Below the pieces are notes generated by a model. That model did no database searches. It had not been told where the DNA came from and saw only the letters and a program-made list of their open reading frames with translations. Position numbers and translations under genes: made by a program. Shown here piece after piece: positions 32 through 57,660 of a DNA stretch of 64,000 nt (position 1 is its first letter; every line of letters starts with the position of its first letter). Location: assembly GCA_051294905.1 (NCBI GenBank), contig CM119379.1, positions 20,584,001 through 20,648,000 of the forward strand. The letters are read 5' to 3'. This DNA comes from Botryllus schlosseri (taxonomy: Eukaryota).

Positions 32-2078
32 ATTATGTACAGATCAACACAGCAGTGTTAGAACCCATCCTGATTTTTCTTACGTCGGGGAAAATTTGGC
101 GACATTCTCATCCAATTGGCCACGCAACACTCTCGTGCGGGATGCAGTTAATTTATGGGTCAATGAGGTAAACTGACTAATTTGCAGAGGGAATTCTGAT
201 TCAAAGCACTGACTAGGCATGGGCATAGGCTAATTTTCTGTAGATATGCGGGTTCGCCGACGTCACAAAGTTGTGACGTCATGATGTGGCATAGTTGATG
301 AATGAGCTATATAAATGCCAAATATCTACTGCGTTTAATATAACCAATTACTCAAACACACGATACTATCAGCTGAGAAAAAAAAGGGGTTGAATAAAAT
401 GCTTTAAAATATTTTCCAATTTATCGAGTCGCATCCATTTATTGAGGTCAGGGGCATGCGTATAATGCCTATCATACATGGATAAGTGAAGTTTCTTGTG
501 TTGATGAACTTGCGTATATAATTTATGATGTATATAGTTCCGGTATACGCCGCACTTTCGCACGAATACTATAAGAACTCGAAGACAAACAAAGATGCTA
601 CTTCATTTGCACATCAGCTACTGGCGAGATGCGACGTGCCAATATACCGCGCTCATATCAAATTACAAACAAGCGCTCCATTTGCCGTACAAATGAACAC
701 ACATGTCAGCAGGATATATTCTAGAGAAAGAGAGAGAGATAATTTACCTGGTTCCACCAAAAAAAAAAAGAATTCAATGTTATAATTCAATGTAAAACCA
801 GGCTGTAGCGAAGTGATCGGTAGATCATCAAGTCAACTACAGCCTGAATGGACGCTTATGAAACTCAGTGCATAAAAATAACACATCCCTAAATTAAGCC
901 ATTCATTATGTAACAAAACAGAGGTAAATGAAATATACCTTCGTCCGGTTCTTAAGCGCATGGGGATTAGAGTACTGGTTCTCGAGTAGGGGTATTCAGT
1001 GAGATGAGTCGAGTGGTGTGGCTGCAGATGATGTTTTCCACTCTAGGAAACAAGCTCAATTCCAACCACTAGAAGCGAAGTTATTGCAGTAGAAAAATTT
1101 GGATTTGAATAAAGTAGTATTTACGGTGACTAACTCTTTTATTATTTATTATAAAATCATAGAATTATAAATTTTTCTACTGCAATAACTTTGCTTTTAG
1201 TGGTTGTAATTGAGCCAAATTTGGTGTGCATCATCTCTACCGACAGCCTAACAATTTTATGGGGTCGGCAGAAAAATTTTGAAATTATATTTTTTTTGTT
1301 TTTTAATGATAAATTCAAAACTTTCTACTGCACGAATCTCGCTTCTACTGGTTGGGATGGATCCAAAGTTGGTGAGCAGCGTTTTTTTCAACCAACCTAA
1401 CAATTTTATCATGTAGCCAGTGAAATCTGACAGAAATTTTTTTTTGAACACCCCTTGGTATGTATATCATGAGGCGGTGCATATGCCGCAAAAACATCAA
1501 GGACAAAAATAAACTACGTCCTTTCCTTTCCAATAAAGTTTGTCGAGCACAATGAGCTTTCCTTCATTCATTCATCATTCATTGGTTTATTAGCAATTTT
1601 ATCAGTTCAATACACCACAAAAATCCGATACAATGAAAGATAGGAAGGTGTCGAAGATGACTTGGAGTAGTCTATAAAATCGGACACCCACCTTGGCCTA
1701 CCTGTTATTGGAGAAGTTGAGAAAGCATTCAAATCGATTACGAAGGCGCATTTTACTTTTCAGATACACGATTACAACTACACTGCCGGGATCTGTTCAT
1801 CGTCAGTTGTGTGCGGGGAGTGTACCGACGTATGCGGACACTACACACAGGTCGTTTGGCACAATAGTTACGCCATAGGCTGCGGTATAGCCGATTGCGG
1901 AGGTGACATCCAGCTCGGTTGCCAGTATGGAGAAGGCGGGAATTATCAGTAAGCTTTGACTTTGTCCAAGGTACAGGGGATGCAGTGTGTTCTTTGCAGG
2001 GGTCAATATCCTTACCAACAAGGCACTCCATGCAGTAACTGTCCTGCTGATTTTACCGAGTGCGATAATAATATATGC
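32..2078 (+). CDS. CAP/SCP domain with Cys-rich hinge (exons 32-167, 1764-1948, start of 2000-2232)
   Basis: Translation: LCTDQHSSVRTHPDFSYVGENLATFSSNWPRNTLVRDAVNLWVNE | IHDYNYTAGICSSSVVCGECTDVCGHYTQVVWHNSYAIGCGIADCGGDIQLGCQYGEGGNYQ | GQYPYQQGTPCSNCPADFTECDNNIC. It contains the GENL, GHYTQVVW, GC..C.Y..GN and PY..G.PCS.C motifs. Confidence 0.95.
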
Positions 2079-5000
2079 GCGGAAGCAGGAGGTGTAACTT
2101 CACCTTCTACCCCGGAGCCATATGTCACAACGGATGCAGTCGATGCATACGAGACAACGTCGCCATCGGAAACAACGGCGACACCGGAATCAACAACGCC
2201 ACCAGAAACAACCCCCTCTGGAGAAACCACTGGTAGTTTGCTTTGAGAATCTTTTGAACTTGATGCCATTTGGCAGCAAGGAAGTGATGGTCCTTTAGTG
2301 AGAGCACTAGAACTATCGACCTTTATAAACCCACAACTAACATGAAACATAATTAACTAGATTGAGTTCTGAGGCAACTTAACAATGATAATACGGATTT
2401 CTAAATTGTAAATGAGCAAAGATATATTGGAGATGGAATCGGCATTTCAAAAGGATGGGGTTTCAAGTTTGAAAGTTTTAATCCTCAAAAATCCACTCCC
2501 TGGCCATGCCACTGTTAGCAGTGATGACTCTTGTGTTTTCTAATTTTTCGGTGACTAAACTTATTTCAAATGCGCAACTAGAACTAGATCTACTAAAAAC
2601 AATAGTTGGTTGACCATCAACTATCTAGAGGGGTAATTTGTACAAGTCTTGGTGAAGTCGATTGAACAAATGCCACTGCCTCTGTTGCTATGACTTTCCT
2701 ATGTTCCTAAACGGACTCGGGCATTTATTATAAACATATATCTGGCATTTAGAGTGACTATGGCATTACTAAGGCAAACACCTTTCATGGAGCTATAATA
2801 CACAAGTTAGATGTGTATTTTCCGTGGCAGTCCTTGGTTAAACGCGTGATTTTGCCTGATATTATTTTTGTAATGCAATCCGGCTATTGCTACACAATCT
2901 CACAAAACAATAACATAAAAGTGAACTAACCTTTTTCGAAATCCATTTCAGTTATTGAGCTTTCTACCTGCTTCACTCCGATCGTTACCAGCATATCCCC
3001 CCAATTTGGAACCGTAAACGATACCATACAAATCGAAGGTACTGTGGTTGTTTTTTTGCCGTGCAGTCTGTTATAGCCACGATTCACAGTTATAGCGTCT
3101 GACTTCATCCAACGAGTAGTTGCGATGTATTGCATGATTATAGCAGTAGTCACCGCTGGTGAAAAGAAATACTGGGTTTGTATTTGAATTAGGCTGTTCC
3201 TGAATTTTAGTGTTATTTTTTAAATCGGAAAATCAGTAATATTCATGCATGAAACCAGAATTGCATATTTTTTTATGTTGTCAAATCACCATTAGAGTAT
3301 TGTGGGTGATGCTTTCTTTAGGTTTGGATTTTTGACTTGGAAAATATCAAAATTTGAAATATCAGCAATGTCCTCTTTTGAAGGTGACAGATATTTATGG
3401 AATACGGTGGAGTTTTGACAAAGTCAAAAGGTTCCAATTCCTTTTTTGACTCAATTTAAGTCGAGTTATTTCAATTCGTCAACGACTGAATGCCAAGCAC
3501 ATTTTGTTGCCCAAAAATGATTTGTGTCAATTTTCAGGTTTCGTAAGGTTTCAGACAGATTTAGTCTGAAAATTCTGTAACATCGTCGTTTATATCACCT
3601 TACATTTAATTACTGATACATATATTTATGGGCTGTCAAAATATTGGATGTCACATTGATGTTATCAAGGTACTGGATTCGGAGACGACTCATGCCGAGT
3701 CACGGTTAGCATGGAAGGAGAAATTGACTGTGTGGTGACTTTTGCAAACGAAACTCTCATCCTATGCGAACCGTCACCAAACGCAGACTCCAGGATCCTG
3801 ACATCGTTGGAGGTAGTTTAAGACCAGCCTTGATCAATCTATGTTTGTGTGACTGTGATTTGTATTGCATTCTTTTTTAAGTCAACACGCATGATGTCTT
3901 ATACCTCTGCACTAGGTCGAGGTTGAAATTCTTGGATATGGATACGCTTTTATCGACATCGAAGAAGACAGTCTGAGACGATTCGCTCTCGTTCCGTCGT
4001 GGGATTCAATCCTTCCTAGTTCAGGGTCTATCGAAGGAGGAAACACCGTCTCTATAAATGGTATGTCACTACTTTTAGTCGTAGAAAAGGCTGAATCATA
4101 TTGTGGGGACATGGATTAATCCCGTGTGACTGCAGCTTCAAGAACTTTTACACCCTAATCCTCACACCGAAATACTTTTCTCTTCTAAAACAGAGTTAGT
4201 ATAATGCTTAGCTCCAATAACCCTACCACTGGCAACAGGACTTTGGAATTGATTCCCTATGTGAGCCGTGAACCTATGCTGTTAAATTCAGGTACTGGCT
4301 TCGTGATGGGCGATGTTGTTGTGGTCTTTGGCGGAGCAGAATGTGTGGTTACCCATCACAGCTATTTCTATATAGAATGTGTGACCTCAAAGGGGACTGA
4401 AGGAGTGCAAACGGTCAAGTAAGATAGAAACCAGCCCTGTGGACTTTTCTATTTTAATTTGTCTGGTGTGTAGACGGCAAAATAGTGACCTTATATCGAT
4501 TAATATATCAAGCTGAATTTTATCCAAATCAGATTCATAGTGTTATATGCGATGTACATTAGGGCTGTTCAAATAAACTTTTTTTCAAATTTTACTAGTT
4601 ACTTGTTGAGATTGTTAGGTTGCTTAGAAATCGCTGGGTATCAAATTTGGGTCAATTCCAACCTGTAGAAGAATTGTTTTGCAGAGTTTTGGCTTTCCGA
4701 AGTTATTTTTTATCAGCCCTAATGTACATCCACCAACGCACTTTTCATTTGGGTATGACATCTTCCCAGCTATTATCGAAATTTTCACAGTGTGCTTGTT
4801 GGCGAAAATCTTGCCGAATGCGACGCTTGCGAATATGAATACGCCGATGATATGACTCCTGACGTAACAACGATTGATCCGGTCGTGATCACGGCGGAGA
4901 ACACTCAGGTTCATTTTACCGGCTCGAAATTTCTTCCATCTGCACATATCTCTGCCGGTGAGACAGATTAAAATGCTATATGTGATACTGGCAAATGCAG

Positions 5001-8000
5001 ATAACATGCCTGTATGCTAATTTCTTCTACCATTTGGGATTTCAGGGGGCTACGAATGTCAAGTAGATTCGGAATCCGATACCAGTGTGAATTGCACTTT
5101 TCCTTCATTGCCGGCTGGCGATCATGAGATTGTGTTTCATGTACACGGAAAGGGATACGCACGTCTGTCAACGCTTACGATAACCGGGTGGGTGTTGGAT
5201 CATCAAACATTCGTACATATTCATGCCTTATCGTCAACATGGCTGCCGGTGATGTGCAACCGGGGTTCTGTGTACTAAATCGAGGGCGTGCAATCTTTTT
5301 GACAAGCAAGCCACTTATGAATATGGCTGCACATTGGGGGCCTTCAAAAATGACTTTTTTTCTCAAATTGTACTGTCTACTTGATAAAATTGTTAGGTTA
5401 CCTAATTTGAGCCTACACACCAAATTTGGTTCAATTCCAGCCAGTAGCCGCATTGCTACAGGAGAACAAAGTTTCTATTTATAATATAAAAATAAATTAA
5501 CAAAAATTTCAAAATTTTCTGTTCACCCCATGAAAGTGTTAGGTTGCCTAGATAGAAACGATGTTCACCAAATCTGGCTCAATTCCAACCAGTGGAGGCG
5601 GAGTTATTGCCATCGAAAAATTTGGATTTGAAGAAAATAGTATTTACGGTGGGCACACCTATAATAAATAATTAAAGAATGTTCAGCGTAAATACTATCT
5701 TATTGATGATCCAATTTATCCGACAGCAATAACTCCACTTCCACTGGTTGGAATTGAACCAAATCTGGTGAACATCGTTTCCATGGACAACCTAACACTT
5801 TCATGGGGTGAACAGAAAACTTTGAAATTTTTGTTGAATTATTTTTATATAATAAATAGAAACTTTGTTCTCCTGTAGCAATGCGGCTACTGGCTGGAAT
5901 TGAACAAAATTTGGTGTGTAGGCTTAAATAGTTAACACCACAAGATTGCGATAATATGAGTACATAGAAAGGAGTCGAAAAGACCTGAAATAGCCTTACA
6001 ATCACACAACCACCTTGGCTCAGAATATGTAAATAACAGGCCCGTACGCAGAATGACAAGTAACTGAAGATCTGATAAAAATGAAAAGTGATGAAAATTT
6101 CAAGTGGCATGCTGGTTTAACAATGGCAATTAGCGATAACAGATTATAGGTAACAGGATATAAATTACGTAAGATTATAGGTTATTATGAAGTACGTGCT
6201 TGTGTTGCCAATAAGCATATTCATAAGCATATTTGATTAAAAAAAAACAGCATTCATGACTGTTTCTTTGTTGCACAATATTAACTAACAACTCAAACCG
6301 AGGTATGATGTCTTTTCCCCAACTCAGTTCATCATGGATCGATGTGTGTGATTGAATCTTTCTGCCGATATTTGATTTCACACGAACAAGAAAAAACGTC
6401 ATTTCGCAAAAACACATTGTTGGTATTTGAATAATCATGGAAAGGTTTGGTACATTTAGAAGCTGCACCTGGAGATCAATTAAATCATCAATTTTTCCGT
6501 GGTAGGCCCTTAGTGTTGTAAATTTGTGATGCTCCCGCACATACCTTTTCATACTGGTAAACTCCATGTATAGTATGGCGCATCCCGGCACTGTCTCAAA
6601 GAGTCACGTCTAGGGCAAGATTTTGTTGCGGTCAAATCCGTGGAAACTTGCACTTATTTTTCACAAAAGTTGCAGTAAAAATATTTCCAGGTAAAAGATA
6701 GTTTCATGAAAAATCGAAAAAGTTGCAAAAAGTTGTATGAAAAAAAGGAGAAAAGTTGCAATGTAAGATTCCTCCAAGCAGCTTATAACAGCATACTACA
6801 TGACTTCAGAGTATTTAGGTAGCTACCGGAAGCCGTAAAAAAAGTTGCAAAAACTTGCCCTAGTCATGTCTTATCAAGATGAATCTTTCTTGGTGCATCG
6901 ACATATATTCGGAAAAATCTCATCGGAAATCACCATTAGGCTCACTAGCATCTTCCGTATATTCACATTGTGTAAAAATTCTCTTCTGGTCTACATCTCA
7001 GCAGCTGACCACCAAATTTTGTTCATTACAGATTGTTAACAGTGGACGGTTTGAATCCATCTGTTGGAAGCACGGCTGGCGGACTGAGCGTAGACGTGAC
7101 CGGGTATGGATTTAATACTGAAGACTTGAGCGTCACAGTTGATTCGATGGAAGCTGAAATTGTGGACGGTTCCGTTTCGAACACACAGGTTTCTATTATG
7201 TTTTCCTTTAAGAATTAGAGACAGGGTAGAATTCAGTTTGAATCAATGCAATGAATGCAGGGATTGTCGCTAACAAAGTATTTCTATTTTTTTGAAGTAC
7301 TAGAATAGATTTTGCCTCCTTGCGCTACTTACTCAAGTGGGGATGATTTTAGGCTACTTTTTACTTCTACTTGACAGTTTTCTGTTTTTTGAGCAAAACT
7401 AGGTGTGCAATATTTTTGCTTATTCGAAAATCGCTACATCTGCTTCAGTAGAAATTTATGAGATCGCTACGTTGACCACCTCTGGTTATCTTAGTTGAAA
7501 AACTGGAAAATTTTCAGCCTAGCCAGATTATACTAAGATTAGAATTACAGCTACACATATTTTCTAAATTAGGTTAAAATTAAAATTACTGAACTCACAA
7601 AAAATCTCCAAGTTTACTTGCTATGGCCTTGAGTCGAATTGATGAATTTAGTACGTTTTTCACGTTAGCTCATATGTTGGCTTAAAAAGTAAACATTTTC
7701 TCCAGCGGCCTTGTGCTGAATTCGGCATGACTTTTCCCCACATTGTAGCAATCTGGTTGAAAAGCTGTCACAGGCCCAACGAAATCGTGTGGCGAGCCTC
7801 ACTTTATCAGGGGATGGAATATCTACGGAAGGCATTTAAACATACAGTTAAAAATCCATAAAAATCATAAACTATAAAAATCTAAAAACCTTGTGAACCC
7901 AGTGTATCTTCCGATACAACCCTAAAGCGAGATTCCCCCCTAAAATGTTCAAAATTCCCCCGGTTGGGAACCACTGGCTTTGACTGTCTCGGAATGCTTA

Positions 8001-38000: not shown

Positions 38001-41000
38001 TCTTTGTCAATTGGTTTCTACTTATTGCGTGTTGGCAGTCCGTTCCACGCTCCGTCCGACTCACTTGTTTATCTCTGGCATGCGTTTCCAGGTCACTGAA
38101 GATCGTATATGGATTGCAAATGCTGTAAGCGAGTTATCGGGCCGGAGGCGAAAGCGGGAAGGCGAATTAACTGTTACGTTTGGGATCGGTTCGCAGCCAG
38201 CGACAGCGTCGCCAGTCGTCGAGAGGACCATTCCTAGAGCGGTACATTGCAAATTATGTCATGGTTTGCTGATGAAGTAGGCCTGTACGGAGAGTTGGTC
38301 AAAGTAGTTAGTGTTGCTACTGGAGTTGAGCTGTAAATGATTCTCCAATGCATGTAGAAGTATCGATTAAGTAACATTAGTGCAAAAAGTAATACGTCCT
38401 GCCTAAAATGATGTGAGTAACAGAAGGGGAAATGGTATAAAAACATGACCGCCGGAATAGTTTGTAAAAGTAGGCAAATATATTTTGAGTACCCTGAAAA
38501 ACCGGCCGCATCCGCAGACGATGAGGAACATTCTCTCACGTGGATGCTTAAATGTATTCTGCTACGCTGTGCGGTTATTCGGTTATTAGTAGGGCAAGTT
38601 TTTGCGACTTTTTTTTACAACTTCCAGCGGCTTCCTAAGTACTCAGAAGTTTTGTAGTATGGTGTTTTAGGCTGTTTGGAGGAATTTTTCGTGCTACAGT
38701 GCCTTGGATACGGAACGACTCGAGTATCTCATACCCTAATAATTTCAAGGAACTTTTCCATAAATGCAACTTTTTAGTGCAACTTGTGTGAAAAATAAGT
38801 GCAACTTTCCGTCGATTTTACTGCAACAAAAACTTTCCCTAGTTATTAGCAATCCTTACTGTACATACGTAGGTTGTAGAGGAGTCGGACAATGGGACCG
38901 TGACCATCATAAGTCCTGGTGAGCCCGATGAAGCCACCGAACTTGCGACCGCGGCGGATGAAGCCGAAAGGGCTGCACTGTTGGCGGTGAGAATTGTCTT
39001 TATCTGTAACGATTTGTAGATTGGTATTGATGTTTTGTTATCGACGGTGCTATGTGCAGTGTGGGGTGTCAAATTTAATAATGCCCCTGTTCGAATTTTT
39101 GGCAATGACCGACATAGTTGGCGCTTAAAATTGGCTGGCTGTGTCGGTCAGACTTGCTGAAGTATATTCCGTATATTCATAATGAAGGATAGTGGATCAC
39201 TGCAATGTATTACGATTGTAGTAATACGGTCAGTTGCGACAATATGCACATGCGTACAATCGTATAATGGATCGTACTAGAACAGTGGTTCTTAATCTGA
39301 GTCAAGACCAAGAACCCGAGACACACGCCCAACACATGAGATTCGTGAATACATGCCCATCTGAGACATCAATGGCTAAAGGGTATAAGGTGCGAGCAGT
39401 ATATTCGAATTGTGTTTCTATAGATTAATAATACAGGGCACACAAATAACATCCAGTCGTGATAAACTCTCAGCAATGTGTCGCGCTGACAATATATCAA
39501 TTCGAAACTGAAATCGCAAGAAATAGTAGCAGTCTTGAAAACTGATAGAGTTTACTTCTCGCGCAGAACATGGAAACGATAGCCGCCGTGGTGGAATCGG
39601 GACAGGCGACTGAGTTAATCACAGATGGGGTACCAATATCAGGAATAGCACTCACACCACCACCGCCGACGCCTACCACTGACACTGAGGTAAGTTGTGT
39701 CACCGAGCCATCATTTAAAACATGATATCATTTGGCATCAGCCATGGGTATTTGAAATTGCTCAATTGGTAAAAAAGAAAACACTTTACTTTTCAGAACG
39801 GAACAGACTCAGTTGAGCCGATTGTGCTGGTTGAAGTGGCCAGTTTAGCTACGGTCGCTTCACCTGATCCTATGGGAGGTCGGGCTGGAGTAGCGTTTCA
39901 AGGAGCGGCAGTGGTGAGTGGCTGTGGAGTGGAGGGGGGAAATAATTTGGAATCTGACCGTGGCGTTGCTATCTTTTCTAGTATCAACTTCTCGATGTAA
40001 ACGGGGATGTTGCTTCTCCGCTGGCACATTGGGTGGTGAAAGCCTCTATTTTCGAAGGGGATGACGAGACCGCCAGCATCGTAAGCGGATCCGAGGAACC
40101 AATGGTCGATGGTATTGCACGGTTTGAGGGTACGTTTATTTACTGGTCAAACCTATGAATTGGCCATATTTTTATTCAAATACTCGGGACAGACTTAGAC
40201 AACTAGATAATCCTAAGTATATTAATTAGAGCAAAATGCCATTAATCTAATTGTAATCTAATTTGTTAAATGATTCATAGCTATAATTCCAATCGAATTT
40301 CCGTTTCTCTCGAAAATGCCACAGGAGAGCTGTACATAGCGAAACGAGTCAAGCTTGTTGTACAGATGTTTGTCATCCGCGTGCTTATGGGAAGGAACTC
40401 TCATTTCATATGAAGTGAACCAGATTCAATTTCCAAATCTTCGTTAATTCAGTAATTCGAACTCCAATCTAATTTGAGAAAAACTGTAGCTCTAATTCTA
40501 ATTGTAATCTAATTTGGCCACATTGATCCGTTTGTTTATTTCAAGATTTTCATCAAGATAGAAATAGAGAGAAATAGCATAACATAACATTGCTTTCTTT
40601 CGTCTGGTCTTTTACTGGGCTTTTTTGTCGCCGTAAGAACGGCAACGGCGGGGGAAGAGGAGCCCCGATAAACCTCCGACGGGAATCGAACCCGGTTCGT
40701 CAGATTGGTGGGTGCTTATCGTAACCACTACACTATCTCCCCCAGCATACATGCAATTGAAATGTGATTTATAGATAAGCAAGGTATAGACTGGCGGCTC
40801 GATATAGCAGTGGAAGGGTTGTAAGCAAGTCACAAGGTTCCGAGTCACAGGTCGATTTTGCTTTTATAGTTTTGACTCGAGTCAATGAATAAACTAAGGT
40901 CATTGCAAATACAATTTAGCAGTCGCTTGAAAGCAGAGATTCAAAATGTTGTTTTCTTGTGCTCACAAGAAAGTAAATTAGTGCTTTCAGGTGGTAAGTG

Positions 41001-44000
41001 ATTCCACATACAACCACCAACACAGGTTTGCGATAAAATGAAAAGATAGGGCGAATGTCGATTTGGTGAAAGTCCGACCGCTTTGGTAAGCGGATTCTGT
41101 TTTATTTACAGAGTTTTTAAAAGGTTTCGATTTCTACGAGATTTCAATACGTAATTTGTCATTTCGAAAACCTGTGCCGCCTGGCTGCTGGCGCGGACAC
41201 TTGTCTTATGTTTGGCTGTTTCAATTTACGGCAGATTTGACAATTGACAAAGGCGGGAGATACGTTCTGCAATTCGTAGCCGAGTCTGGAAACATCAGCA
41301 GCGGTAACACCAATTTCATAGTAACGGCGCCTGCCATCAATGTAAGATGATTTTGCTTGTTTTTATCATAGGCGCACTTAACAATCCCATTTCTTTCGTT
41401 TATTTTCGAATTTTTAACTATTCAAAACAGCACAAATTTCGTTTTGATGAAAAAATGGGAGTGTGCCGAAACGACTTGGAGTAGTCTTGTATTTAGACGC
41501 CCAGCTTGAACCCAGAATAAATAAGTGCAATGTGTCAGTTGGCGGTGTCGATATGTCCGGTTGTGGTCCAGTAATTGCGATTATGTGGTCTTGGACAATC
41601 TGCATTGACCTCTACAATCACTCGATCTGATAAAGGAGTTCAATAGCGATCTTAGCTTTATCGCATATTATCGTTTAAACGGCTCTTGTTATGATTTATA
41701 ACAACCTATGCCCGTATTACGCTTCAGCTGAGACCACCGCGAGTGCCTACCGAATGTACGGACGAAGAAGGGGACGATTTCTTCGACAAGGAATATATCT
41801 GGGAACAAGACAATTGTACTCATCTATGCACCTATAATTGTGACGGTATGCATTTTTCCCTTGACGTGATGATTGTCCGTATTCGAGCTGTCGTCTTAAC
41901 AGTGTGACAGATTTGAAAAGTCTAAATATGCACCGGTTCTGCATCACATTCTAATTTGTTATTTTTTCGACCATGCCTATTTCATTCACGGTTTTTGGTT
42001 GAACACGACTTCGCGGATACGTCATTCAAACTAACTAGCATTAGGATGGAGTAAAAATGACTTTTTTTTCTCGAATCAAAAAAAGCAGGTTCGTAAATCC
42101 CGACAAATGACCTAAACTTCAATAAAAATTGACTTTAGGGGACTGCCCCCATTTTCAAGCCGGCAACCCCCCAATTTCTGCGCGCGAGTGGGCAAAATCG
42201 CCCATCTCGGCAACCGCAGGTCGTAGAGTCATGAAATATAGCTCAAAAGCTGCTAAAAGGTCGTGTTTCTATCCGTCCTTTGAAGAAAGTTCGATCTGTT
42301 GTGCACACAAAGCGAGTTATAGCCAAAAATGCAGTATAATTCGATGCGGGTAAACTGCGGGAGTAACAACATCGCGCGTAGCTTTGGGCTACATGTTTCA
42401 TGGGCCTATGATACGATGCGACCAATGGAGGTTTCAAGGCTTGCACAATTGAAAAATCCTATCAGCACTTTAATTTCCGTGAATAAATTACCCTTCAGTA
42501 CTCGAAAAGATCATCTGTCACTACTTGGTTCGAATTATTAGTATTAATCCTCGATTCAGATTTGAGTACTCGAACCATTGTGCCCAACCCCATTTATAAG
42601 CCTACAATGTACTTAAGCTCCAATTCTATTCTCACACTCCATGTAGGTTCCGGTGAGCGCTGCAGAGATATGACGTCGTGCGGCCCACACGCAGAGTGCC
42701 TGGACCACGAGTGCGTGTGCGGCATTACTACGTTCGATCCGAATCTTCCTGAGAATCTCGAGGCTACTTTGTCTCCCGAGATAGAATGCGCTTCCAGCTA
42801 CATTGAGTTGACGTGAGACGCTTGGCTATTTTTGACGCGCTGGGCGAATGTTGAGAGCAATCATGTACATTAGAGAAGAATTATCCAACTTGTAAATGTT
42901 TCGATGTGCATGTGCAACGCTTTACTCGTTACACCGAGTCCTTCATACACGCCATCCCTGGTTTTGCATTGTGTCTTGTGTGTATCGCATTGTGATCCTA
43001 CATGGTTGATTACTATGTGAAATAAGTTGCAAAAGCTACCAAGTTCTTACTTTTATTGTACATTGTGTGCTTTGAGCGGATGGCTATTCATGAATCGATG
43101 CAAAATGTAACTACAGGCATGAATAATCGAAACTATTGATATTTTCAAGTTTCATGGTGATATATCATTGGTGTTATGCCTGTTTTTTTGCCATAGTCTG
43201 CTAAGGAATTAACGGGTATTCACTGAGAAATTGATGTCTTGTTAAACAAAGTGCTATCAGTCAACTTCTATGGGACTTATGCCAATAATTGTCGGAACTG
43301 TTCATTCTTTTTCATTTTTGCCGTATAAGCTATCTGTCAAAATATATCTTAAGTTTCTGACTGATATGTCGGGGGTGTCCTGGTTATTTTTGCCGTACTC
43401 TGCTGAAGAATTGGTGGGTATTCGATCATAAATTAATGTCTCGATGAAGTATATAGTCCACCAGTATACAGCCATAACATAGTGATGATTCCATGACAAA
43501 GCACTAGAATATGGTTTTTCGGTGTAATGTTGATCATAAACTTGACCCCAATGCTGCAATTTCTCAACCATAGAATCTTGTTCATGGCAGGATCGATAAG
43601 TGTGGCGCGAACGCCATCGGTTTTAATTTGGCCAAACTTTTCCTGCGGGGTGAAGGACTGAGGCTGCGGCGCGCCGCTGTGGAAACCGTGTTTCCAGCGG
43701 ACAGGTCGTGTTCGGGGAGAGTGATAAATACCTTTGACGGAATCAGGTACAGCTTTAAACTGGAAGGAAACCTGAACGAATGCGATCCGGAAGTAATTGT
43801 GAGTAGTGTTCCGAGGGTTCTGGACTTTGGTGGCGTGTATGTGTATGAATTGTTGTAGCAAAGTTTGGCTAGGCCTGTGTTCTCTACGATAACAAAATAT
43901 GTCATACAAAATACAAATACAAATACAAAATAGTTATAATCTTCGAAAATATACTCAGCAGCTTCTGTGGTTATTAGATGCGGTTCTTACGTCGATGTCA

Positions 44001-47000
44001 CGCCTAAAACTGATGTAAATTTACCTATACTACTTTTCACAATACAAGGTATAGCCCAAAAAGCGAGTGGGTATGCCTAGGAAACTGTTCAAGCAGAATT
44101 GGAAATAGTATGAAAACACAACCACTAGAGTAAGTAATGTACGTACGCAACACCTAAAGTACTCTAAAAAGGGAGTACTTCATTACTGACCATGTCTGTA
44201 CATAATCTCTAAATACAACTTCTAAATTCGTGCTGCGAGCATGGTTTCGAGTCGATAATATGAAGCATATTCATTTGAAATTCGGACGTTAATGTGAGAT
44301 GCCACTAATTTCAAATATATTCGCAGGATAACGGAACTCACATTCAGTATTACCATATCATGCACGGCTACAAACCTGTGCGACACGGTAACATCATCCG
44401 CGATCGCCCGATTGAAGTTGAATTCATGTGTGCTTACCCGAGTATGTCCAAGGAGACGTTGGACACGCCAATCCTGCCCTACATAAGGTAACGATTTTGT
44501 AATTTCGGAGACTTGGTGGTTGTTGGTAAGGTCTGATCGATATTTTGGCCGATATCTGTCACTGTAGGACTATAGGAGAATAAGAAAAATTGCTATGTCG
44601 TTCCCCTACTAGAATGACACGGGATGATTTCCCCATGGCAGTACATAGAATATCTACTGATGGCACGATAATTTGATATGGCGCAGTCGATGAACATTGC
44701 TAGTACTAGTGATTTAATGATGACTCTCACAAGTCTGACGTGTATGCTGTTAATAACTACATATATTGCTCTATTCTTTGTTTCGTTTATGATATGGCCC
44801 TTATGATTGTAATCGTTCTTTCATAAGGCAATCGGTTATGTATGCAAAATCAGTATGATTACTTGACTATGTAGTATTTGTCATAATTGATTACAATTAT
44901 ATATTGCTATGTATGATTATGAAATGATTATCTTTGTGATATTTTGCTCACGCTTTGATTTTGAGCAGGGCTCTGGAGTAGGTATAAATGTTAAATTGCT
45001 CCAACTCCAGCTCTGCAGCTCTTTTTATAAACTAACTCCAGCTCCGGAGCACCTTTTCCATTTGAATACCTCAGTAAAAATTATCAACTGGGTCAGTCAG
45101 TAGTCGTAAGCTAATGAATGGTAGAGCAGTAAAGATATTTGCCGCTCGACACTTTTGCCAGTCTACACTCCAAGTCTGCAGTTTTGTGCTCTGCAATCTT
45201 TTGAATGATTGCCATGCACATTGTATCGCTTGGTCTCTAATCTTTTTCCTCATTTCAGTGTGATTACGATTGGCGTCGAATCGCAAGGCTCTTACAATGT
45301 GACGATGAGTTTGTGGACAGACAGCGATTACACCGTTCCGTTGCAGTCGCCGGCGTCAATTCTGGTTTGTAAAATGCTTGCGATTTTTTGCACTTTAGCG
45401 TAACTATAGTGATCGACGCTCAAGAAAGTTCATACTCAAGTAGAAATAGAGGTCCCACCGTACATTTTTATACAAATAAAAATAGCAATTTCCAAGTAAC
45501 TAAAAAAGTAAGTACACTAGGCTATTTTTCCTAAATATTGAAAACTGCTTGAGTGAGTGCGAATCTTAATTTGTCAACCGTATAAATCAATATGATATAT
45601 AACGAAAATGCAGTTGGGTTAAATGAGATATGCATACCGGTATCAAAGGCATAGATGGCAGGCTTCATATAACGGAGTCATCAAAGCCAAGCCATCCAAG
45701 AACAAATAGAGCAAGTGGGAAAAGCGTACTTGAGTACTTTGAAAACGTGATGGCATCCAGGGCTGTCCATTTAGAAAATTTGCTGGACGCAAAAGTGATT
45801 TAGTATCATCGTGGAACATGCAAGCTGTCAGTGTGAAACGAGGTTTTCTACAATGTAAATCGGACTTTGGCAGGACTGTTTGATTTTTATTGTCTTGTCG
45901 CTGATAAGCAAGCTCAGTGTTCTTATTCATTTCGCGGTTAATTGAAAAACGCTGCTATATTATTTTATTTGTTGTGTCACAATAATGACAATATGCCTGT
46001 GCGGCCATATCATCACTGAAATTAATTCGTTCTGCCAGACTCGCGTTTTGCACTGCAGTGATACTGAGCTGGAGTTACGGTATAAAATTATCGGAATCCA
46101 TACTTCACCCTGTTTTAAGTGCTGAGATTATGGTCACGTTTGTCATATACTCTTCATTCTTTTCAATGCCAGGTTCCTGATCCGCTGCATGTGTCTGTGA
46201 AAGCCGTCGGAGCTGACAGCGTCGTGGTCTCCCTTGACAAATGCTCGGCTTATTCGTCGCAGGACACGGACAGTGCGCTCTCCGTAGATTTGATCACAGA
46301 CGGGTAGGCTGTTATTCTCATACTTTCCTTCATGTATATTTTCATACCTTCAAAACACCTAAAGACTGACATAAAATGAAAGGATAGGAAGGAATCGTAA
46401 CGACTTGGGAGACATACACACAGCACACATAATGAAAAGTGTGCCAATCATGATTATTTCACATTGAATCCATTTCCATTGCAGCTGCCCGAACACTCTT
46501 ATCGATGTCGAAGTCACGCAGATTGGTACATCCAACGAGGCGAGGTTCAGGTTCCCATCGTTCGTTCTTTCCACCGAATCGACCGAAGGCGGTTTAGACG
46601 GAGAACTGTACTTGGAGTGTTTCGTTGTGATGTGCACGGAGAACTTGGAACCTTGCACACCGGTAAAGGAATTAATATGCCAACTGTTACTGCCTTTGAT
46701 ATTTGTCGTTTTTGTATTGCTGCTGCTATTTGTATATCAGACGGTGTTAGACTTCTAATGTTTCAGACTACTAAGTAGGTTTCACCTACGTACAAGTAGA
46801 TATAGTATAGTAGTTATACTTTCGGCTAATTTGCTGTATACTTGGCACTTTGTTCAGCAAAATTACTTACTTTTTGCTCTTTGTGTATTGTAAAGCGAGT
46901 AGTTAAAGTTTTGAGATGTTTTCATCAATTTTACGAGTGAGATTATCATGCCGAGAGGGCGAAATAGCCTCCGTATCACGATATCTGGTCATTGTCATAA

Positions 47001-47105
47001 TTGTATCTTTCAGGATTGCGGTGGACTAAGGAAAAGGAGAGGTTTGCCCGGTAATACAATAACCCTAGGACCAATACCGGTTGGAGCAGTAGACCAATCT
47101 CAAGG
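32..47105 (+). CDS. PKHD1L1-like: Giant multi-exon chimeric gene: CAP - linker - 7xIPT/TIG - G8 - beta-helix - G8 - beta-helix - C-terminal region - Cys-rich/EGF - ZP (fibrocystin-L-like); 5' end outside the window, terminal exon unresolved
   Basis: 68 GT-AG exons with matching phases and no stop: 32-167, 1764-1948, 2000-2232, 2952-3038, 3670-3812, 3916-4060, 4292-4418, 4791-4957, 5046-5187, 7032-7188, 8114-8252, 9147-9392, 9843-9977, 11359-11492, 11560-11686, 11795-11992, 12613-12830, 13579-13744, 14514-14725, 15781-16033, 18044-18169, 18236-18387, 18538-18764, 18974-19203, 20630-20781, 21161-21316, 22064-22160, 22358-22562, 23518-23657, 23760-23880, 24361-24490, 25075-25240, 25314-25420, 25754-25892, 26088-26227, 26658-26787, 26855-26977, 27143-27280, 27342-27481, 28117-28243, 28302-28464, 29111-29201, 29261-29414, 30461-30605, 31159-31238, 31297-31491, 31904-32072, 33947-34058, 34372-34502, 34571-34740, 35028-35132, 35894-36043, 37019-37164, 37850-37945, 38092-38241, 38873-38986, 39567-39689, 39797-39913, 39982-40129, 41235-41341, 41728-41845, 42647-42812, 43591-43798, 44327-44487, 45259-45364, 46173-46303, 46485-46662, 47014-47105. 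Fibrocystin-L hallmark motifs include GQAFRLGRYPIHFH, FIEDGIETGN, TPAAFWVTNPDN, KINPSDCVDMECDG and GPQDHGWCAGYTCQ. Confidence 0.9.
2079..2232 (+). CDS. Thr/Ser/Pro/Glu-rich mucin-like linker
   Basis: AEAGGVTSPSTPEPYVTTDAVDAYETTSPSETTATPESTTPPETTPSGETT, ending at a phase-1 donor (g|gtagt). Confidence 0.85.
2952..13744 (+). CDS. PKHD1L1-like: Seven IPT/TIG domains, equivalent to fibrocystin-L TIG8-TIG14
   Basis: Repeated P.I.SISP..G...GG..ITI.G.GF....V.VG...C.V......I.C pattern, e.g. TPIVTSISPQFGTVNDTIQIEGTGFG, PSWDSILPSSGSIEGGNTVSINGTGF and TPVVSSVSPARGGTGGGTLVTIGGSDFS. Confidence 0.92.
5405..5929. repeat. Foldback: ~240-bp inverted arms with ~38-bp spacer
   Basis: 5405-5648 is the near-perfect reverse complement of 5687-5929 (caccaaatttggttcaattcc family). 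The same family occurs at about 1050-1500 and 4560-4740. Confidence 0.9.
6611..6862. mobile_element. hAT-like MITE (TIR tagggcaag); second copy at 38590-38841 in the opposite orientation
   Basis: TSD gtcacgtc / gtcatgtc here and perfect gttattag at the second copy; shared aagttgca subrepeats. Confidence 0.85.
11359..11992 (+). CDS. ~153-aa three-exon insert inside the sixth IPT domain
   Basis: Exons 11359-11492, 11560-11686 and 11795-11992 bridge phase 1 to phase 1 between the two halves of IPT6 (..CEIEQ / DLSQPIADISVPVKVK..). All are open with canonical splice sites. Confidence 0.75.
14514..16033 (+). CDS. PKHD1L1-like: G8 domain 1
   Basis: DVWSSPYTWGGLGVPGEGAFVVIPVGQDIMIDQD...GGRLEVGTEDEPFQHKAIITLHG...GTLDLHG. 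Confidence 0.95.
15236..15279 (-). ncRNA. Second, inverted minimal hammerhead ribozyme
   Basis: Reverse complement reads acgattaccc-CTGATGA-G-tttcagc-C-GAAA-ATAT-TT-gggttca. It is part of the inverted repeat 15212-15398. Confidence 0.65.
15328..15375 (+). ncRNA. Minimal type I hammerhead ribozyme (Penelope-like-element type)
   Basis: tgacgattgccc-CTGACGA-G-tgtcagc-C-GAAA-ATAT-TC-gggttca. Full core, 1-bp stem II, palindromic ATAT in stem III, UC cleavage site and a bulged stem I. Confidence 0.75.
16231..17108. mobile_element. Non-autonomous hAT (Buster/Charlie-type) element
   Basis: TIRs cagggacgggcaac / gttgcccgcccctg; perfect 8-bp TSD gtctaaaa. Confidence 0.9.
17538..17614. mobile_element. 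77-bp hAT mini-MITE inserted in a LINE 3' UTR
   Basis: TIRs cagtggttctcaaact / agtttgagaaccactg; TSD gcctaggc / gcctagac. Confidence 0.85.
18044..25420 (+). CDS. PKHD1L1-like: First parallel beta-helix (PbH1/CEMIP-like) region and inter-G8 linker with RKKR site
   Basis: AEVGLLTRNVVVRG, DQFGAQIMFH, GTHFGYWYRM, RWEHENFIEDVDGSLTG; SRKKRA in exon 25314-25420. Confidence 0.95.
19345..20100 (+). mobile_element. CR1/L2-clade LINE 3' fragment; clearest copy of the most abundant repeat in the window
   Basis: YNIICWRAASKAALKPLQKLQ...LEIAKFMYQFH, then 3' UTR cctaggcca.g.tgg.tgtc.gat.tcaaagactact. Other 3' UTR copies lie at about 1562-1700(-), 5930-6060(-), 8290-8740(-), 14030-14200(+), 15625-15765(-), 17500-17750(+), 46330-46430(-), 51450-51905(-) and 51940-52037(-). 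Confidence 0.88.
23925..24160. repeat. Degenerate minisatellite with cagtagtggt core
   Basis: About five units beginning acagtagtggt or gcagtagtggt, at 40-60 bp spacing. Confidence 0.5.
25754..26977 (+). CDS. PKHD1L1-like: G8 domain 2
   Basis: RWSDAAYWPTGTVPAAGEDVTIPSGDWVVVDV...GGRLILGWEDDLFLG...GAFGGLDLHG. Confidence 0.93.
26400..26615. repeat. Degenerate ~65-bp minisatellite (about 3 units)
   Basis: Recurrent gatttagaaat.tagaatttgatttaaaacagcagtgaatcat..taccttgagcta. Confidence 0.6.
27143..38241 (+). CDS. PKHD1L1-like: Second beta-helix region and conserved fibrocystin C-terminal region, with GRRRKR site
   Basis: AAEVGLLTRNIKI, GQEGYSDRRDPRYA, FMSAHNAAPKKP, EFEWDGDKARGLGDYNIP, ESLDIDSETRRIAPVAL, LSGRRRKRE. 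Confidence 0.95.
32241..32800 (+). mobile_element. L2-clade LINE 3' end (5'-truncated) with (ATT)n tail
   Basis: KLQKIQNIAARLVTRSRKRDHVTPILRSLHWLPVKFRSEYKLLLYVFK...LWNNLP..IR; 3' UTR ends ggcgctctataaattatattattattat. Confidence 0.92.
32801..33680 (-). mobile_element. R4/Dong-like non-LTR retrotransposon 3' fragment (CCHC knuckle plus restriction-like endonuclease)
   Basis: KCRMCHNQNETVAHLMSGC...YTWRHN; ILWDVPVITDREIRSNRPDIIV...IELAVPAD...KESEKHSKYADL...VIGATG. Flanked by (TAA)n on both sides. Confidence 0.88.
38873..41341 (+). CDS. PKHD1L1-like: Acidic/Pro-Thr spacer plus terminal Ig-like module of fibrocystin-L
   Basis: Exons 38873-38986, 39567-39689, 39797-39913, 39982-40129 and 41235-41341. 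The segment ..DGIARFEDLTIDKGGRYVLQFVA.. resembles the last fibrocystin-L module. Confidence 0.8.
40612..40742 (-). mobile_element. tRNA-derived SINE head; related copies at 48600-48840(-) and 57650-57930(+)
   Basis: ggagaTAGTGTAGTGGttacgataagc...ccgGGTTCGATTCCcgtcgg gives Pol III A and B boxes with no acceptor stem. Shared body gctcctcttc..cgc...gc.gttcttacgg. Confidence 0.8.
41728..42780 (+). CDS. TILa/VWC-like Cys-rich module followed by a uromodulin EGF-IV-like repeat
   Basis: ECTDEEGDDFFDKEYIWEQDNCTHLCTYNCD|GSGERCRDMTSCGPHAECLDHECVCGITTF. Confidence 0.75.
42781..47105 (+). CDS. ZP module (ZP-N + ZP-C), consensus furin site RKRR and external hydrophobic patch TITLGPI
   Basis: IECASSYIELTIDKC...RSCSG...NECD...DNGTHIQY...NIIRDRPIEVEFMCAYP...GSYNVTMSLW...LDKCSA...ITDGCPN...EARFRF...LYLECFVVMC...CTPDCGGLRKRRGLPGNTITLGPI. 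The ZP cysteine pattern is complete. Confidence 0.93.
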
Positions 47106-47684: not shown

Positions 47685-47751
47685 GCAACATGCAAGGAAA
47701 AGAGAAGTTGGTGAAGGAGTAGGTTATGTCGAGGCGAAGTGGGGGTTCTAG
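47685..47751 (+). CDS. Candidate terminal exon of the giant gene (no transmembrane helix)
   Basis: Strong acceptor ttttccag|g, phase-compatible with the 47105 donor, reads GQHARKREVGEGVGYVEAKWGF*, followed by AT-rich sequence. An alternative candidate is 47365-47464. Confidence 0.35.
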
Positions 47752-56078: not shown

Positions 56079-57660
56079 TTACACAAAGCGCCAGTAACCC
56101 TTGAGATCATCACGATATTTACGAGCAGCTGCACTTGGGAAGTTCGATCTTGACACAGGCAATTGCCGCATGTTCCAGAATAGTGGCAACGATCTGCGCC
56201 GATTTCCTTCAATCAAATCACCTTGATTATCAATAGCATCACCATGCATATCTGATGCAGGACTATTCTCTGCTTGCAGATAATTATGAAGTACAACACA
56301 TGCCTGAACAATCACGCCAGCCAAATCAGGAGCTGCATTATTTGTCCTATGGAATATTTGCCACCTGCTAGCTAAAATATTAAATGAGTTCTCTACCACA
56401 CGCCGACCTCTACTAAGTCCGAAATTAAATATTTTGAGCTCAATTGATTTATGTCGGATACAGTAAGGCTTCATCGGCAGCGAAGAAAAATGGCGTAAGA
56501 ACATCAGGAAGATTAATGGCGTCCTAGTAACAGGTATTTTAAGTGTGCCATTTTCCAGGCCTCTTCCAAATCTAGAATCACTCTGACGCCCATGGTCCAC
56601 AATATTGACAAAAATGAATTTGTTGTGGACATCACAGGCAGCTAGGATAGGGTTGCCATACGGTACGTCCGGAATGTCACTGTTCAAATTGCGTCCAGGA
56701 GGAAATTCCAAAATATATACCTAAATGTCCGGAATTTTCAACGTTTGAAATATAGGATCAAAATATTTTCGTAAACTAAAGTAAACGATATTATTTTTGG
56801 ACAGAGTTATGCCACTTGAATATTTTCTTCGCGGTGCGAGCGATTTCGTATCACAATCGTTGATTTTAATATGTGAACCACCGCTCCCGCAAACATGAAA
56901 TCAAAAATTAATCACAATAATCATCATTTACCGAAATAAGGCTATTGATTGTAATCGCGATTATATGAGAATGCTACCAAAATTAGCCTTGATTAAGTCT
57001 GGGAAACGGTGTTTGAGTTGGGCCACAGAACATTTTTAAATTATAAATGCAGTCGCGACCATAAACAGTTTAAAACCGCTGGATGAGCAACCTGCTGGTG
57101 TGGACTGGCATTTACACTGATAAATAGTTTCATCCGTGTGACATGACAAGTATATATTAACGTTCCTGCTTTATCGAAGTCATCATCCTCCACCAGCTCT
57201 ACCGCTAACTACGATCATGTGGGCAGAGAAAGGATCAAAATTTTATAGTGATACATGGAAGAACCAATATTATATAGACAGATTTCATTCAGAAAATAGA
57301 AACCAGATAAATATAATAAGCCCCCAAAAAGTTGCATCGATAACCTTACGGTGGGCTCAAGATAAGTGTATATTTCTACGGTGAAAAAATTGTTGTTTCA
57401 GTCCTGGTTACAAACACGCAAGCAACCACATACATGTACCGACTCAACAGTCCTGTCCTGATACGCATCGTCACAATCTCTGGTCGATAGGCTAAGCTTT
57501 GCTAGTGTGATGTCACATTCACAGACAGTGTGTCAAATATCTCGTTTTAATATCCGTTAGCAAGTGCTAAAGAGTGTCCGGGATTTGCCCTAAGCTCGGA
57601 TCACGATTGAAAAGTATCCTTTTTTAAGTATAAAAGCCACTGCCACTTTCAGGAGGTGCT
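56079..57660 (-). pseudogene. PIF/Harbinger DDE transposase, decayed and interrupted
   Basis: PPESGSGFY..KGYFSIVI(R)A [insertion] ACDVHNKFIFVNIVDHGRQSD...IFNFGLSRGRRVVENSFNILASRWQIF...IVQACVVLHNYL. Frameshift present and the expected GD.AF motif is lost. Confidence 0.88.
56648..57592. mobile_element. hAT-like non-autonomous element splitting the Harbinger transposase
   Basis: Left end tagggttgcca, degenerate right end ttgcccta; TSD agctagga / agctcgga. Transposase reading resumes across it. Confidence 0.75.

What the first reader, a model, noticed from the sequence alone, without database searches (positions are those of the whole stretch)
32..47105. One open reading frame joins three unrelated extracellular families: CAP + fibrocystin-L + uromodulin-type EGF-ZP
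Seen in sequence: 68 GT-AG exons join in frame from CAP motifs (GENL, GHYTQVVW) through a fibrocystin-L core to a complete ZP module. There is no stop, start codon with signal peptide, or intergenic gap at either fusion point. Established: fibrocystin-L/PKHD1L1 is IPT-PA14-IPT-G8-G8, while CAP proteins and ZP proteins are normally separate gene products. Inference: this is a >3,400-aa chimeric secreted protein, an architecture I do not recognise. It may be a ZP-polymerised filament or matrix (mucus net, egg coat, cuticle or sensory cupula) whose subunits project a long fibrocystin stalk tipped by a lipid- or metal-binding CAP domain.
Basis: partly seen in the sequence, partly recalled or inferred. 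Interest (0 to 1): 0.93.

Follow-up and report, generated by a model that had tools for sequence, protein, structure and literature searches.

The report
Fibrocystin-L gene with CAP and ZP
An animal gene (a sea squirt's, by another agent's note) for the giant surface-coat protein fibrocystin-L carries a CAP domain in its middle and a filament-forming ZP module where the membrane anchor normally is; RNA shows these parts are spliced together, a combination found in no other fibrocystin-L examined.

Summary
My own gene model gives 66 GT-AG exons in one open frame across window 32-47751. Spliced RNA contigs cross all 16 junctions I could test, including both fusion points.

The interpretation needs two corrections:
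- **3' end.** The gene does not end at 47105. One more exon (47685-47751) carries the stop.
- **5' end.** The gene very probably does not start in the window. About 1,500 N-terminal residues of fibrocystin-L lie upstream on the same strand, colinear with the family. They begin with an ATG and a signal-like peptide at window -45321.

So CAP plus its mucin-like linker is a clean internal insertion, not an N-terminal swap or tip.

The C-terminal module has ZP-C support, an RKRR cleavage site and a hydrophobic patch, but no membrane anchor. ZP-N and EGF are unproven.

None of 286 fetched fibrocystin-L-family proteins shows CAP or ZP.

Verdict: a real, RNA-supported new variant of a known family. 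Function is inferred only.

The parts
32..167 (+). CAP exon 2 of 4 (GENL motif at 87-98). CAP exon 1 lies upstream of the window at -793 (or -726) to -535 and carries RKRR and RQKR before the CAP start.
   Evidence: RNA joint 167|1764. Sequence. CAP exon 1 hits Pfam CAP profile positions 1-30.
1764..1948 (+). CAP exon 3 (GHYTQVVW at 1836-1859)
   Evidence: Pfam PF00188 positions 82-117, 23.4 bits. PDB CAP proteins at E 1.6e-7. RNA joints on both sides.
2000..2232 (+). Cys-rich CAP hinge (2028-2081), then a 48-aa Thr/Pro/Ser/Glu-rich mucin-like linker (2088-2231)
   Evidence: Translation and composition. RNA joints 1948|2000 and 2232|2952.
2952..13744 (+). Second part of the IPT/TIG array (16 exons). 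Colinearity with PKHD1L1 resumes here at about residue 1490.
   Evidence: Pfam TIG on exons. tblastn and blastp colinearity. RNA joints 3038|3670, 4418|4791, 4957|5046.
14514..16033 (+). First G8 domain (two exons)
   Evidence: Pfam G8 positions 1-65 at 54.7 bits and 66-124 at 61.5 bits. Genome scan.
18044..25420 (+). First beta-helix (CEMIP/PbH1 type) and the following conserved region
   Evidence: Pfam CEMIP_beta-hel, 76.8 bits, on 18975-19202. tblastn at 60-75% identity on single exons.
25773..26977 (+). Second G8 domain
   Evidence: Pfam G8 positions 61-101 on 26658-26786. tblastn.
27143..41341 (+). Second beta-helix and the rest of the fibrocystin-L ectodomain. Homology to canonical proteins runs to about residue 4017-4152 (window 39570-41246). 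An RRRKR site lies at 38146.
   Evidence: Pfam on 28304-28462. blastp. Furin-like sites. RNA contigs of 3.4-4.5 kb reach from upstream of 41234 through the 3' end.
41728..42780 (+). Cys-rich stretch with one EGF-like Cys spacing (42661-42720). The family is not verified.
   Evidence: Translation. No Pfam family at E<=1. RNA joints 41341|41728 and 41845|42647.
42781..44487 (+). Putative ZP-N and the interdomain linker
   Evidence: Four-Cys pattern. Weak Pfam ZP-N positions 63-101, E 0.13. No support from PDB or Atlas. RNA joints.
45259..46662 (+). ZP-C (three exons)
   Evidence: Pfam PF00100 positions 2-25, 32-73 and 86-132 in order, 12.1+19.2+20.1 bits. phmmer to this genome's own ZP-C exons at E 1.6e-6 and 1.5e-4, against none in 30 shuffles. 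Atlas nearest clusters are ZP at 0.92. RNA joints.
47014..47105 (+). Dibasic consensus cleavage site RKRR (47029-47040), followed by a hydrophobic patch-like strand (47041-47091)
   Evidence: Sequence. RNA joints 46662|47014 and 47105|47685.
47685..47751 (+). Last coding exon: a hydrophilic 22-aa tail and the stop TAG at 47749-47751. The 3' UTR runs on to about 48020. It lies outside the finding's coordinates.
   Evidence: The RNA loose end after 47106 maps to 47686-47715 with 1 mismatch. Sequence.

Best explanation
This is one very large gene of about 93 kb, about 100 exons and about 5,200 codons. It is a fibrocystin-L (PKHD1L1) family member that has gained two foreign modules. Order along the protein: a signal-like peptide; the IPT/PA14/IPT array colinear with PKHD1L1 residues 31 to about 1517; two dibasic sites (RKRR, RQKR); a CAP domain with a Cys-rich hinge; a 48-aa mucin-like linker; the rest of the IPT array; G8, beta-helix, G8, beta-helix and the remaining ectodomain to about residue 4000-4150 of canonical proteins; a Cys-rich/EGF-like stretch; a ZP module; RKRR; a hydrophobic patch; and a short hydrophilic tail. 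No fibrocystin material is lost at the CAP insertion. The canonical C-terminal transmembrane anchor is missing, and the ZP module sits in its place. Shown: both in-window fusions are spliced in RNA. Inferred: the upstream half belongs to the same mRNA. Also inferred: the product is secreted, is cut at the ZP cleavage site and joins a ZP-type polymer, so that a coat protein normally held by a membrane anchor becomes a subunit of an extracellular filament or matrix. The pre-CAP dibasic sites may split the arm into two pieces.
For: RNA contigs join CAP exons to the next IPT exons (32-167|1764-1948|2000-2232|2952-3038|3670..). They also join the fibrocystin core to the ZP exons and 3' end (40129|41235 through 47105|47685). 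These come from four runs of two studies. The full model aligns with fish PKHD1L1 as model 28-265/442-1728 to subject 31-238/225-1517, then model 1966-2543 to subject 1490-2070, then model 2683-4623 to subject 2054-4017 (41% identity, 1,525 bits). CAP and the linker (model 1729-1965) have no counterpart. The upstream half is intact: an ATG and a hydrophobic N-terminus at -45321 aligned to residue 5 onward of PKHD1L1, and a stop-free GT-AG chain of 33 exons. CAP exon 1 has no in-frame ATG before the CAP core. No convincing signal-peptide exon lies in the 1.8 kb upstream of it. Two in-frame GT-AG routes link the last upstream exon to it. Domain calls: CAP (33, 49), PA14/G8/beta-helix/TIG (45, 48, 69), ZP-C (32, 60, 73). 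No 19-residue stretch exceeds a mean hydropathy of 1.8 anywhere, whereas canonical homologues reach 2.1-3.8 at their anchors.
Against: No RNA read was laid on the stretch between the upstream exons and CAP exon 1, so the single-mRNA claim for the 5' half rests on colinearity, frame and the lack of an alternative start. Several upstream exons of the model are doubtful. They add about 180 aa with no homology. If the intron after -2329 is retained, a stop follows at once, so a separate upstream product is possible. ZP-N, EGF and the hydrophobic patch are not verified by any tool. Each ZP-C exon scores below Pfam's cut-off on its own. Many ZP proteins need a membrane anchor to polymerise (general knowledge, from memory), and none is seen here. 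Assembled contigs show each junction but not that one molecule carries all parts.
Confidence: 0.65

Rival explanations
1. There are two transcription units. The upstream fibrocystin-L N-terminal half is its own product, ending by intron retention or polyadenylation after -2329. A CAP-first mRNA (CAP, core, ZP) starts at an internal promoter or at a spliced-leader acceptor, which is possible if this is a tunicate. In that case CAP really is the N-terminal tip.
For: Reading through the donor at -2329 gives an immediate stop, and AATAAA/ATTAAA signals follow. An out-of-frame ATG in the small exon at -2153 could give a short peptide of modest hydrophobicity (mean hydropathy about 1.45) spliced to the weak acceptor at -866, in the CAP frame. 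Another agent's note says this genome trans-splices and has operons (not tested here).
Against: That peptide is a poor signal peptide, and the -866 acceptor scores 0.7 against 1.4-7.2 for confirmed acceptors. The cassette interrupts fibrocystin-L without losing any residues. The upstream half keeps an open frame and its own signal peptide. CAP exon 1 has no in-frame ATG before the CAP core.
Confidence: 0.25
2. The joins are artefacts or rare read-through between neighbouring genes. On this view a CAP gene, a fibrocystin-L gene and a ZP gene sit in tandem, and the assembler or an occasional conjoined transcript links them.
For: The runs are assembled contigs, not single molecules. The CAP-side junctions rest on one contig of depth 6.5 in one run, and another run holds an unspliced contig at 1920-2291.
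Against: Every joint is an exact GT..AG intron removal that keeps the frame. The ZP-side joints appear in four runs of two studies, at the same depth as the flanking exons. No alternative first exon, start codon or signal peptide exists for a ZP or CAP gene at the junctions. The CAP cassette lies inside the colinear fibrocystin-L gene.
Confidence: 0.04
3. The C-terminal module is ZP-like in sequence but does not polymerise. The protein would be a soluble secreted or loosely bound giant, and the ZP part would serve as an interaction domain, as in non-polymerising ZP proteins such as endoglin or betaglycan (from memory).
For: There is no transmembrane or GPI-like tail. ZP-N is unverified. The per-exon ZP-C scores are lower than for other ZP genes of this genome.
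Against: A dibasic site followed by a hydrophobic strand sits where polymerising ZP proteins have their cleavage site and external hydrophobic patch (the comparison is from memory). Fish egg-coat ZP proteins polymerise without an anchor (from memory).
Confidence: 0.25

Closest known systems
Fibrocystin-L / PKHD1L1 (vertebrate and invertebrate deuterostome orthologues, e.g. P0220, P0014, P0006, P0176)
   Same: The domain order is the same: signal peptide, IPT, PA14, IPT array, G8, beta-helix, G8, beta-helix. The alignment is colinear from residue 31 to about 4017-4152, with 41% identity over about 1,950 aa of the core.
   Different: It has an internal CAP-plus-mucin cassette at about residue 1500. 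It has no C-terminal transmembrane segment and carries a ZP module instead. Canonical members scanned or listed have no CAP or ZP Pfam domain.
Polymerising ZP-module proteins of the uromodulin / GP2 / tectorin type
   Same: There is a C-terminal ZP-C with a matching Pfam profile order. Cys-rich sequence lies ahead of the ZP part. A dibasic site is followed by a hydrophobic strand containing LGPI. From memory this resembles uromodulin's external hydrophobic patch; that is a lead, not a test.
   Different: No GPI or transmembrane anchor is present. No D8C domain was seen. No Pfam EGF hit was found. Single exons gave no PDB match. The passenger is a fibrocystin-L of about 4,800 aa.
CAP superfamily proteins (PR-1, GLIPR1, CRISPs, Ancylostoma secreted proteins; PI15/CRISPLD type from memory)
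   Same: The CAP core motifs are present, with Pfam and PDB matches. A Cys-rich hinge follows the core, and dibasic sites lie upstream, as in propeptide-bearing CAP proteins (from memory).
   Different: The domain is embedded in the middle of a giant multidomain protein rather than being a small secreted protein. It has no close paralogue in this genome.
Giant ZP-anchored apical matrix proteins (Drosophila Dumpy, C. elegans FBN-1/NOAH; from memory)
   Same: It would work the same way: a very long extracellular arm attached to a C-terminal ZP module.
   Different: The repeat families in the arm are unrelated. No membership is claimed.

Membership tests
Fibrocystin-L / PKHD1L1 | Long array of IPT/TIG domains | tested here: met
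   Pfam TIG on exons 3672-3812, 4294-4416, 5048-5185 and 9149-9391. Colinear alignment.
Fibrocystin-L / PKHD1L1 | PA14 domain near the N-terminus | tested here: inconclusive
   An upstream exon (L005:6895-7110) hits PA14 positions 32-77 at 19.1 bits, below the cut-off of 24. The region aligns colinearly with the PA14 part of homologues.
Fibrocystin-L / PKHD1L1 | Two G8 domains, each followed by a right-handed beta-helix | tested here: met
   First G8 at 54.7 and 61.5 bits, and CEMIP_beta-hel at 76.8 and 22 bits. Second G8 at 22.3 bits. Genome scan.
Fibrocystin-L / PKHD1L1 | End-to-end colinearity with family members | tested here: met
   blastp of the model against P0220, P0023 and P0176.
Fibrocystin-L / PKHD1L1 | Single C-terminal transmembrane anchor with a short tail | tested here: not met
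   No hydrophobic 19-mer above 1.8 in the model. The tail after 47105 is hydrophilic. Homologues reach 2.1-3.8.
CAP superfamily (PF00188) | CAP fold signature motifs and profile match | tested here: met
   Pfam CAP positions 1-30 (21.3 bits) and 82-117 (23.4 bits) on two exons. PDB CAP structures at E 1.6e-7 to 1e-5. HNEAR, GENL and GHYTQVVW seen in the translation.
ZP module | ZP-C domain | tested here: met
   Three consecutive exons hit PF00100 at positions 2-25, 32-73 and 86-132. The sum is 51 bits, but each is below 24.6 alone. Matches to this genome's ZP-C exons. Atlas ZP clusters at 0.92 with 181-188 shared features.
ZP module | ZP-N domain with four conserved Cys | tested here: inconclusive
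   Only Pfam ZP-N positions 63-101 at E 0.13. No PDB or Atlas support. The Pfam ZP-N model finds only two exons in the whole genome. The Cys pattern is present.
ZP module | Consensus dibasic cleavage site after ZP-C, followed by an external hydrophobic patch | tested here: met
   RKRR at 47029-47040, followed by a 17-aa Gly/Pro/Ile/Val-rich strand. Its role as a patch is inferred.
ZP module | C-terminal transmembrane or GPI anchor (typical of polymerising members) | tested here: not met
   The frame ends 22 hydrophilic residues into the last exon.
Uromodulin-type EGF-ZP proteins | Recognisable EGF domains (and D8C) ahead of the ZP module | tested here: not met
   No Pfam family at E<=1 for 41728-41844 or 42649-42810. 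Only an EGF-like Cys spacing is present.

The most novel reading that the evidence does not exclude
The fusion is a 'Rosetta stone'. In vertebrates PKHD1L1 coats hair-cell stereocilia (PMC6707252), and the overlying tectorial membrane is built of ZP proteins. Here the two functions sit in one polypeptide. If this protein forms the coat or cupula over mechanosensory cells of this animal, it would show that the fibrocystin-L coat and the ZP matrix are an ancient physical partnership. It would also predict a direct PKHD1L1-tectorin link in vertebrates. A lipid- or sterol-binding CAP domain would be an added, lineage-specific function.
Probability: 0.12. Interest if true: 0.8.

Novelty: new variant of a known kind. 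Interest (0 to 1): 0.55.

Why it matters
Fibrocystin-L is a giant coat protein whose partners and mode of action are poorly understood. A natural version has swapped its membrane anchor for a polymerisation module and carries an embedded CAP domain. That gives a concrete, testable hint that the family works together with ZP-type extracellular matrices. It is also a clean, RNA-supported example of domain gain by insertion without loss. Finally, it corrects a companion note on the same window, which read the CAP cassette as replacing the N-terminal 1,550 residues.

Tried and rejected
- **Word-index protein search with CAP exon 1.** The aim was to find transcript-derived fragments spanning its 5' junction. 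Nothing was found.
- **PDB sequence searches with single ZP exons.** No matches. The exons are too short.
- **Atlas look-ups for the two ZP-N exons.** No usable hit.
- **Rfam on the whole window.** No hits.
- **Second round of self-training of my exon chainer.** It overfitted and filled introns with tiny exons, so I discarded it. Later runs used a stiffer intron penalty, and forced RNA junctions served only as a bonus.
- **Membrane-anchored isoform by read-through of the donor at 46662.** The intron frame encodes an 18-residue hydrophobic run. I rejected this for the sampled runs, because depth drops to the exon share after 46662 and only the spliced joint is seen.
- **Separate signal-peptide exon for CAP or for the ZP part.** None was convincing.
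- **Steps not possible.** Structure prediction, Pfam, PDB or complex prediction on the spliced CAP or ZP modules could not be run.
- **Organism.** I did not try to name it. Other agents' notes call it a sea squirt. The genome size of 495.5 Mb and at least 16 large scaffolds are compatible with that.

Full report
**What the window is.** The window is G000:C9:20584001-20648000, plus strand, in a 495.5-Mb assembly. Its composition is about 40% G+C, with short stop-free blocks on the plus strand typical of an intron-rich animal gene. Notes by other agents on this genome call it a sea squirt with spliced-leader trans-splicing. I did not test that.

**Checking the observation.** No exon list came with the finding, so I built my own model. 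I seeded coding statistics from tblastn matches of fibrocystin-L proteins. I then chained GT-AG exons in frame by dynamic programming.
- The model has 66 exons and about 3,372 codons between 32 and 47751, with a single stop at the end. The exon table is in notebook entry 3.
- Public RNA runs give exact GT..AG joints. One 753-nt contig of run X1 joins 32-167, 1764-1948, 2000-2232, 2952-3038 and 3670 onward. Other contigs give 4418|4791 and 4957|5046.
- Contigs of 3.4-4.5 kb in runs X25-X27, and shorter ones in X1 from another study, join 41235-41341, 41728-41845, 42647-42812, 43591-43798, 44327-44487, 45259-45364, 46173-46303, 46485-46662 and 47014-47105.
- The unmatched ends of those contigs map to 40099-40128 and 47686-47715. 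So the contigs continue into the previous fibrocystin exon and into one further exon.
- All 16 testable junctions agree with the in-frame model. Both fusion points are therefore real at the RNA level.
- One run also holds an unspliced contig at 1920-2291, which I read as pre-mRNA.

**The three families.**
- *CAP.* Pfam PF00188 matches profile positions 1-30 and 82-117 on two exons. PDB CAP proteins match at E 1.6e-7. The HNEAR, GENL and GHYTQVVW motifs are present.
- *Fibrocystin-L.* Pfam gives G8 twice, CEMIP-type beta-helix twice and TIG. There is also a single 1,525-bit alignment at 41% identity to fish PKHD1L1 residues 2054-4017.
- *ZP-C.* Three consecutive exons hit PF00100 at positions 2-25, 32-73 and 86-132. 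The spliced module matches bona fide ZP-C exons elsewhere in this genome, at E 1.6e-6 and 1.5e-4, with no hit in 30 shuffles. Protein-language-model neighbours of the last ZP-C exon are ZP clusters, at score 0.92 with 181-188 shared features.
- *Not verified.* ZP-N has only a Cys pattern and a weak hit. The 'EGF' stretch has no Pfam hit at E<=1.

- *The 3' end.* The frame does not end at 47105. It splices to 47685 and stops at TAG 47749-47751, after a short hydrophilic tail.
- *The 5' end.* The window cuts the gene. I fetched 50 kb upstream. Fibrocystin-L proteins align there colinearly on the same strand.
- The upstream part starts with an ATG and a hydrophobic N-terminus at window -45321, aligned to residue 5 onward of PKHD1L1.
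- A stop-free GT-AG chain of 33 exons runs from that ATG to -2329. It aligns to PKHD1L1 residues 31-1479 at E 1e-153.
- In the joined model, homology runs to subject residue 1517, skips the CAP cassette (model 1729-1965), and resumes at subject residue 1490.
- So nothing of fibrocystin-L is missing. CAP plus linker is an insertion, not an N-terminal replacement.

**The link between the upstream half and CAP exon 1.** CAP exon 1 lies just upstream of the window, ending at -535.
- It has no in-frame ATG before the CAP core. It begins with the dibasic sites RKRR and RQKR.
- No good signal-peptide exon lies between -2329 and it.
- Two in-frame routes link the last upstream exon to it. One is direct, to an acceptor at -726. 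The other goes through a 53-nt exon (-2170..-2118) with strong splice sites, to the acceptor at -793.
- I could not test this link with RNA, because both read-laying runs were already spent. It is the main open point.

**The C-terminal end.** Homology to canonical proteins extends to about residue 4017-4152 (window 39570-41246). That is about 275 residues before the anchor of the sea-star homologue. The model holds no hydrophobic segment that could be a transmembrane helix, whereas homologues do. The Cys-rich stretch and the ZP module follow. An RKRR site lies at 47029-47040, followed by a Gly/Pro/Ile/Val-rich strand. From memory, this is where polymerising ZP proteins have their cleavage site and external hydrophobic patch. 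A further dibasic site (RRRKR) lies at 38146.

**How it most likely works (inference).** A secreted fibrocystin-L of about 5,200 aa would have its membrane anchor replaced by a ZP polymerisation module. Cleavage at RKRR would release the hydrophobic strand and let the ZP part join a filament. Long IPT/G8/beta-helix arms would project from that filament. The CAP domain sits about one third along the arm. If convertases cut at RKRR/RQKR, CAP would instead sit at the new N-terminus of the distal fragment. The lack of an anchor weakens the polymerisation idea but does not exclude it.

**Is it known?**
- The exhaustive profile search with a G8 exon found no protein closer than 63%. So this gene's product is not in that collection.
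- None of the 120 best fibrocystin-L relatives lists a CAP or ZP Pfam domain. Two canonical members scanned directly have neither.
- phmmer of my spliced CAP and ZP parts against all 286 fetched family proteins found nothing.
- In this genome the other G8 loci (C14 at 11.7-12.0 Mb, C4 at 23.39 Mb) are more than 1 Mb from any ZP-C hit. The CAP exon has no close paralogue.
- Literature searches found no paper describing fibrocystin-L joined to a ZP module.
- These searches cannot exclude orthologues in unsampled relatives. DNA runs labelled as two other organisms share many exact words with the 3' region.

**Verdict.** The feature is real and RNA-supported, and the architecture is unrecorded. 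It is a variant of a known family in a lineage where domain shuffling of large extracellular proteins is common. I therefore score interest as moderate.

Noticed in passing
window 1459-1528 (intron between CAP exons 2 and 3): A segment of about 70 nt is matched by very many RNA reads, at depth up to about 18,000 in contig runs and hundreds in raw reads. The reads continue into poly(A) after 1528-1531. Upstream they share a sequence that is not in the window. It looks like the 3' end of a repeat family, or of an abundant transcript made elsewhere. Rfam finds nothing.
   Followed up: partly
window 1000-1400 and 5200-6000: Intronic repeats with very high summed contig depth (hundreds to thousands) and many partial matches. 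They are probably transposable-element families expressed elsewhere.
   Followed up: no
window 42494-42586: A short stretch in the intron before the EGF-like/ZP exon has depth 44-133 in four runs. Unrelated sequence flanks it on both sides in the contigs, so it is a short repeat transcribed at other loci, not an alternative first exon.
   Followed up: partly
window 56082-56720, minus strand: A 213-aa open frame matches the DDE_Tnp_4 (Harbinger/PIF-type) transposase, E 1.8e-8. It is a transposon remnant downstream of the gene.
   Followed up: partly
window 46663-46755: Reading through the donor at 46662 stays open and encodes an 18-residue hydrophobic run before a stop. That would give an anchored, truncated ZP-C. 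No read-through is seen in the four runs laid.
   Followed up: partly
window 1920-2291: Run X2 holds a 374-nt contig that is colinear with the genome across the 51-nt intron 1949-1999 and past the donor at 2232. It is unspliced pre-mRNA or a retained-intron form, and it would stop the frame at 1950.
   Followed up: no
upstream of the window, about -38398 to -38256 and -43936 to -43900 (G000:C9 about 20,545,600 and 20,540,100): My chain used a Gly-Val dipeptide-repeat open frame and a few other blocks with no homology to fill long introns of the upstream half. They are probably not real exons.
   Followed up: no
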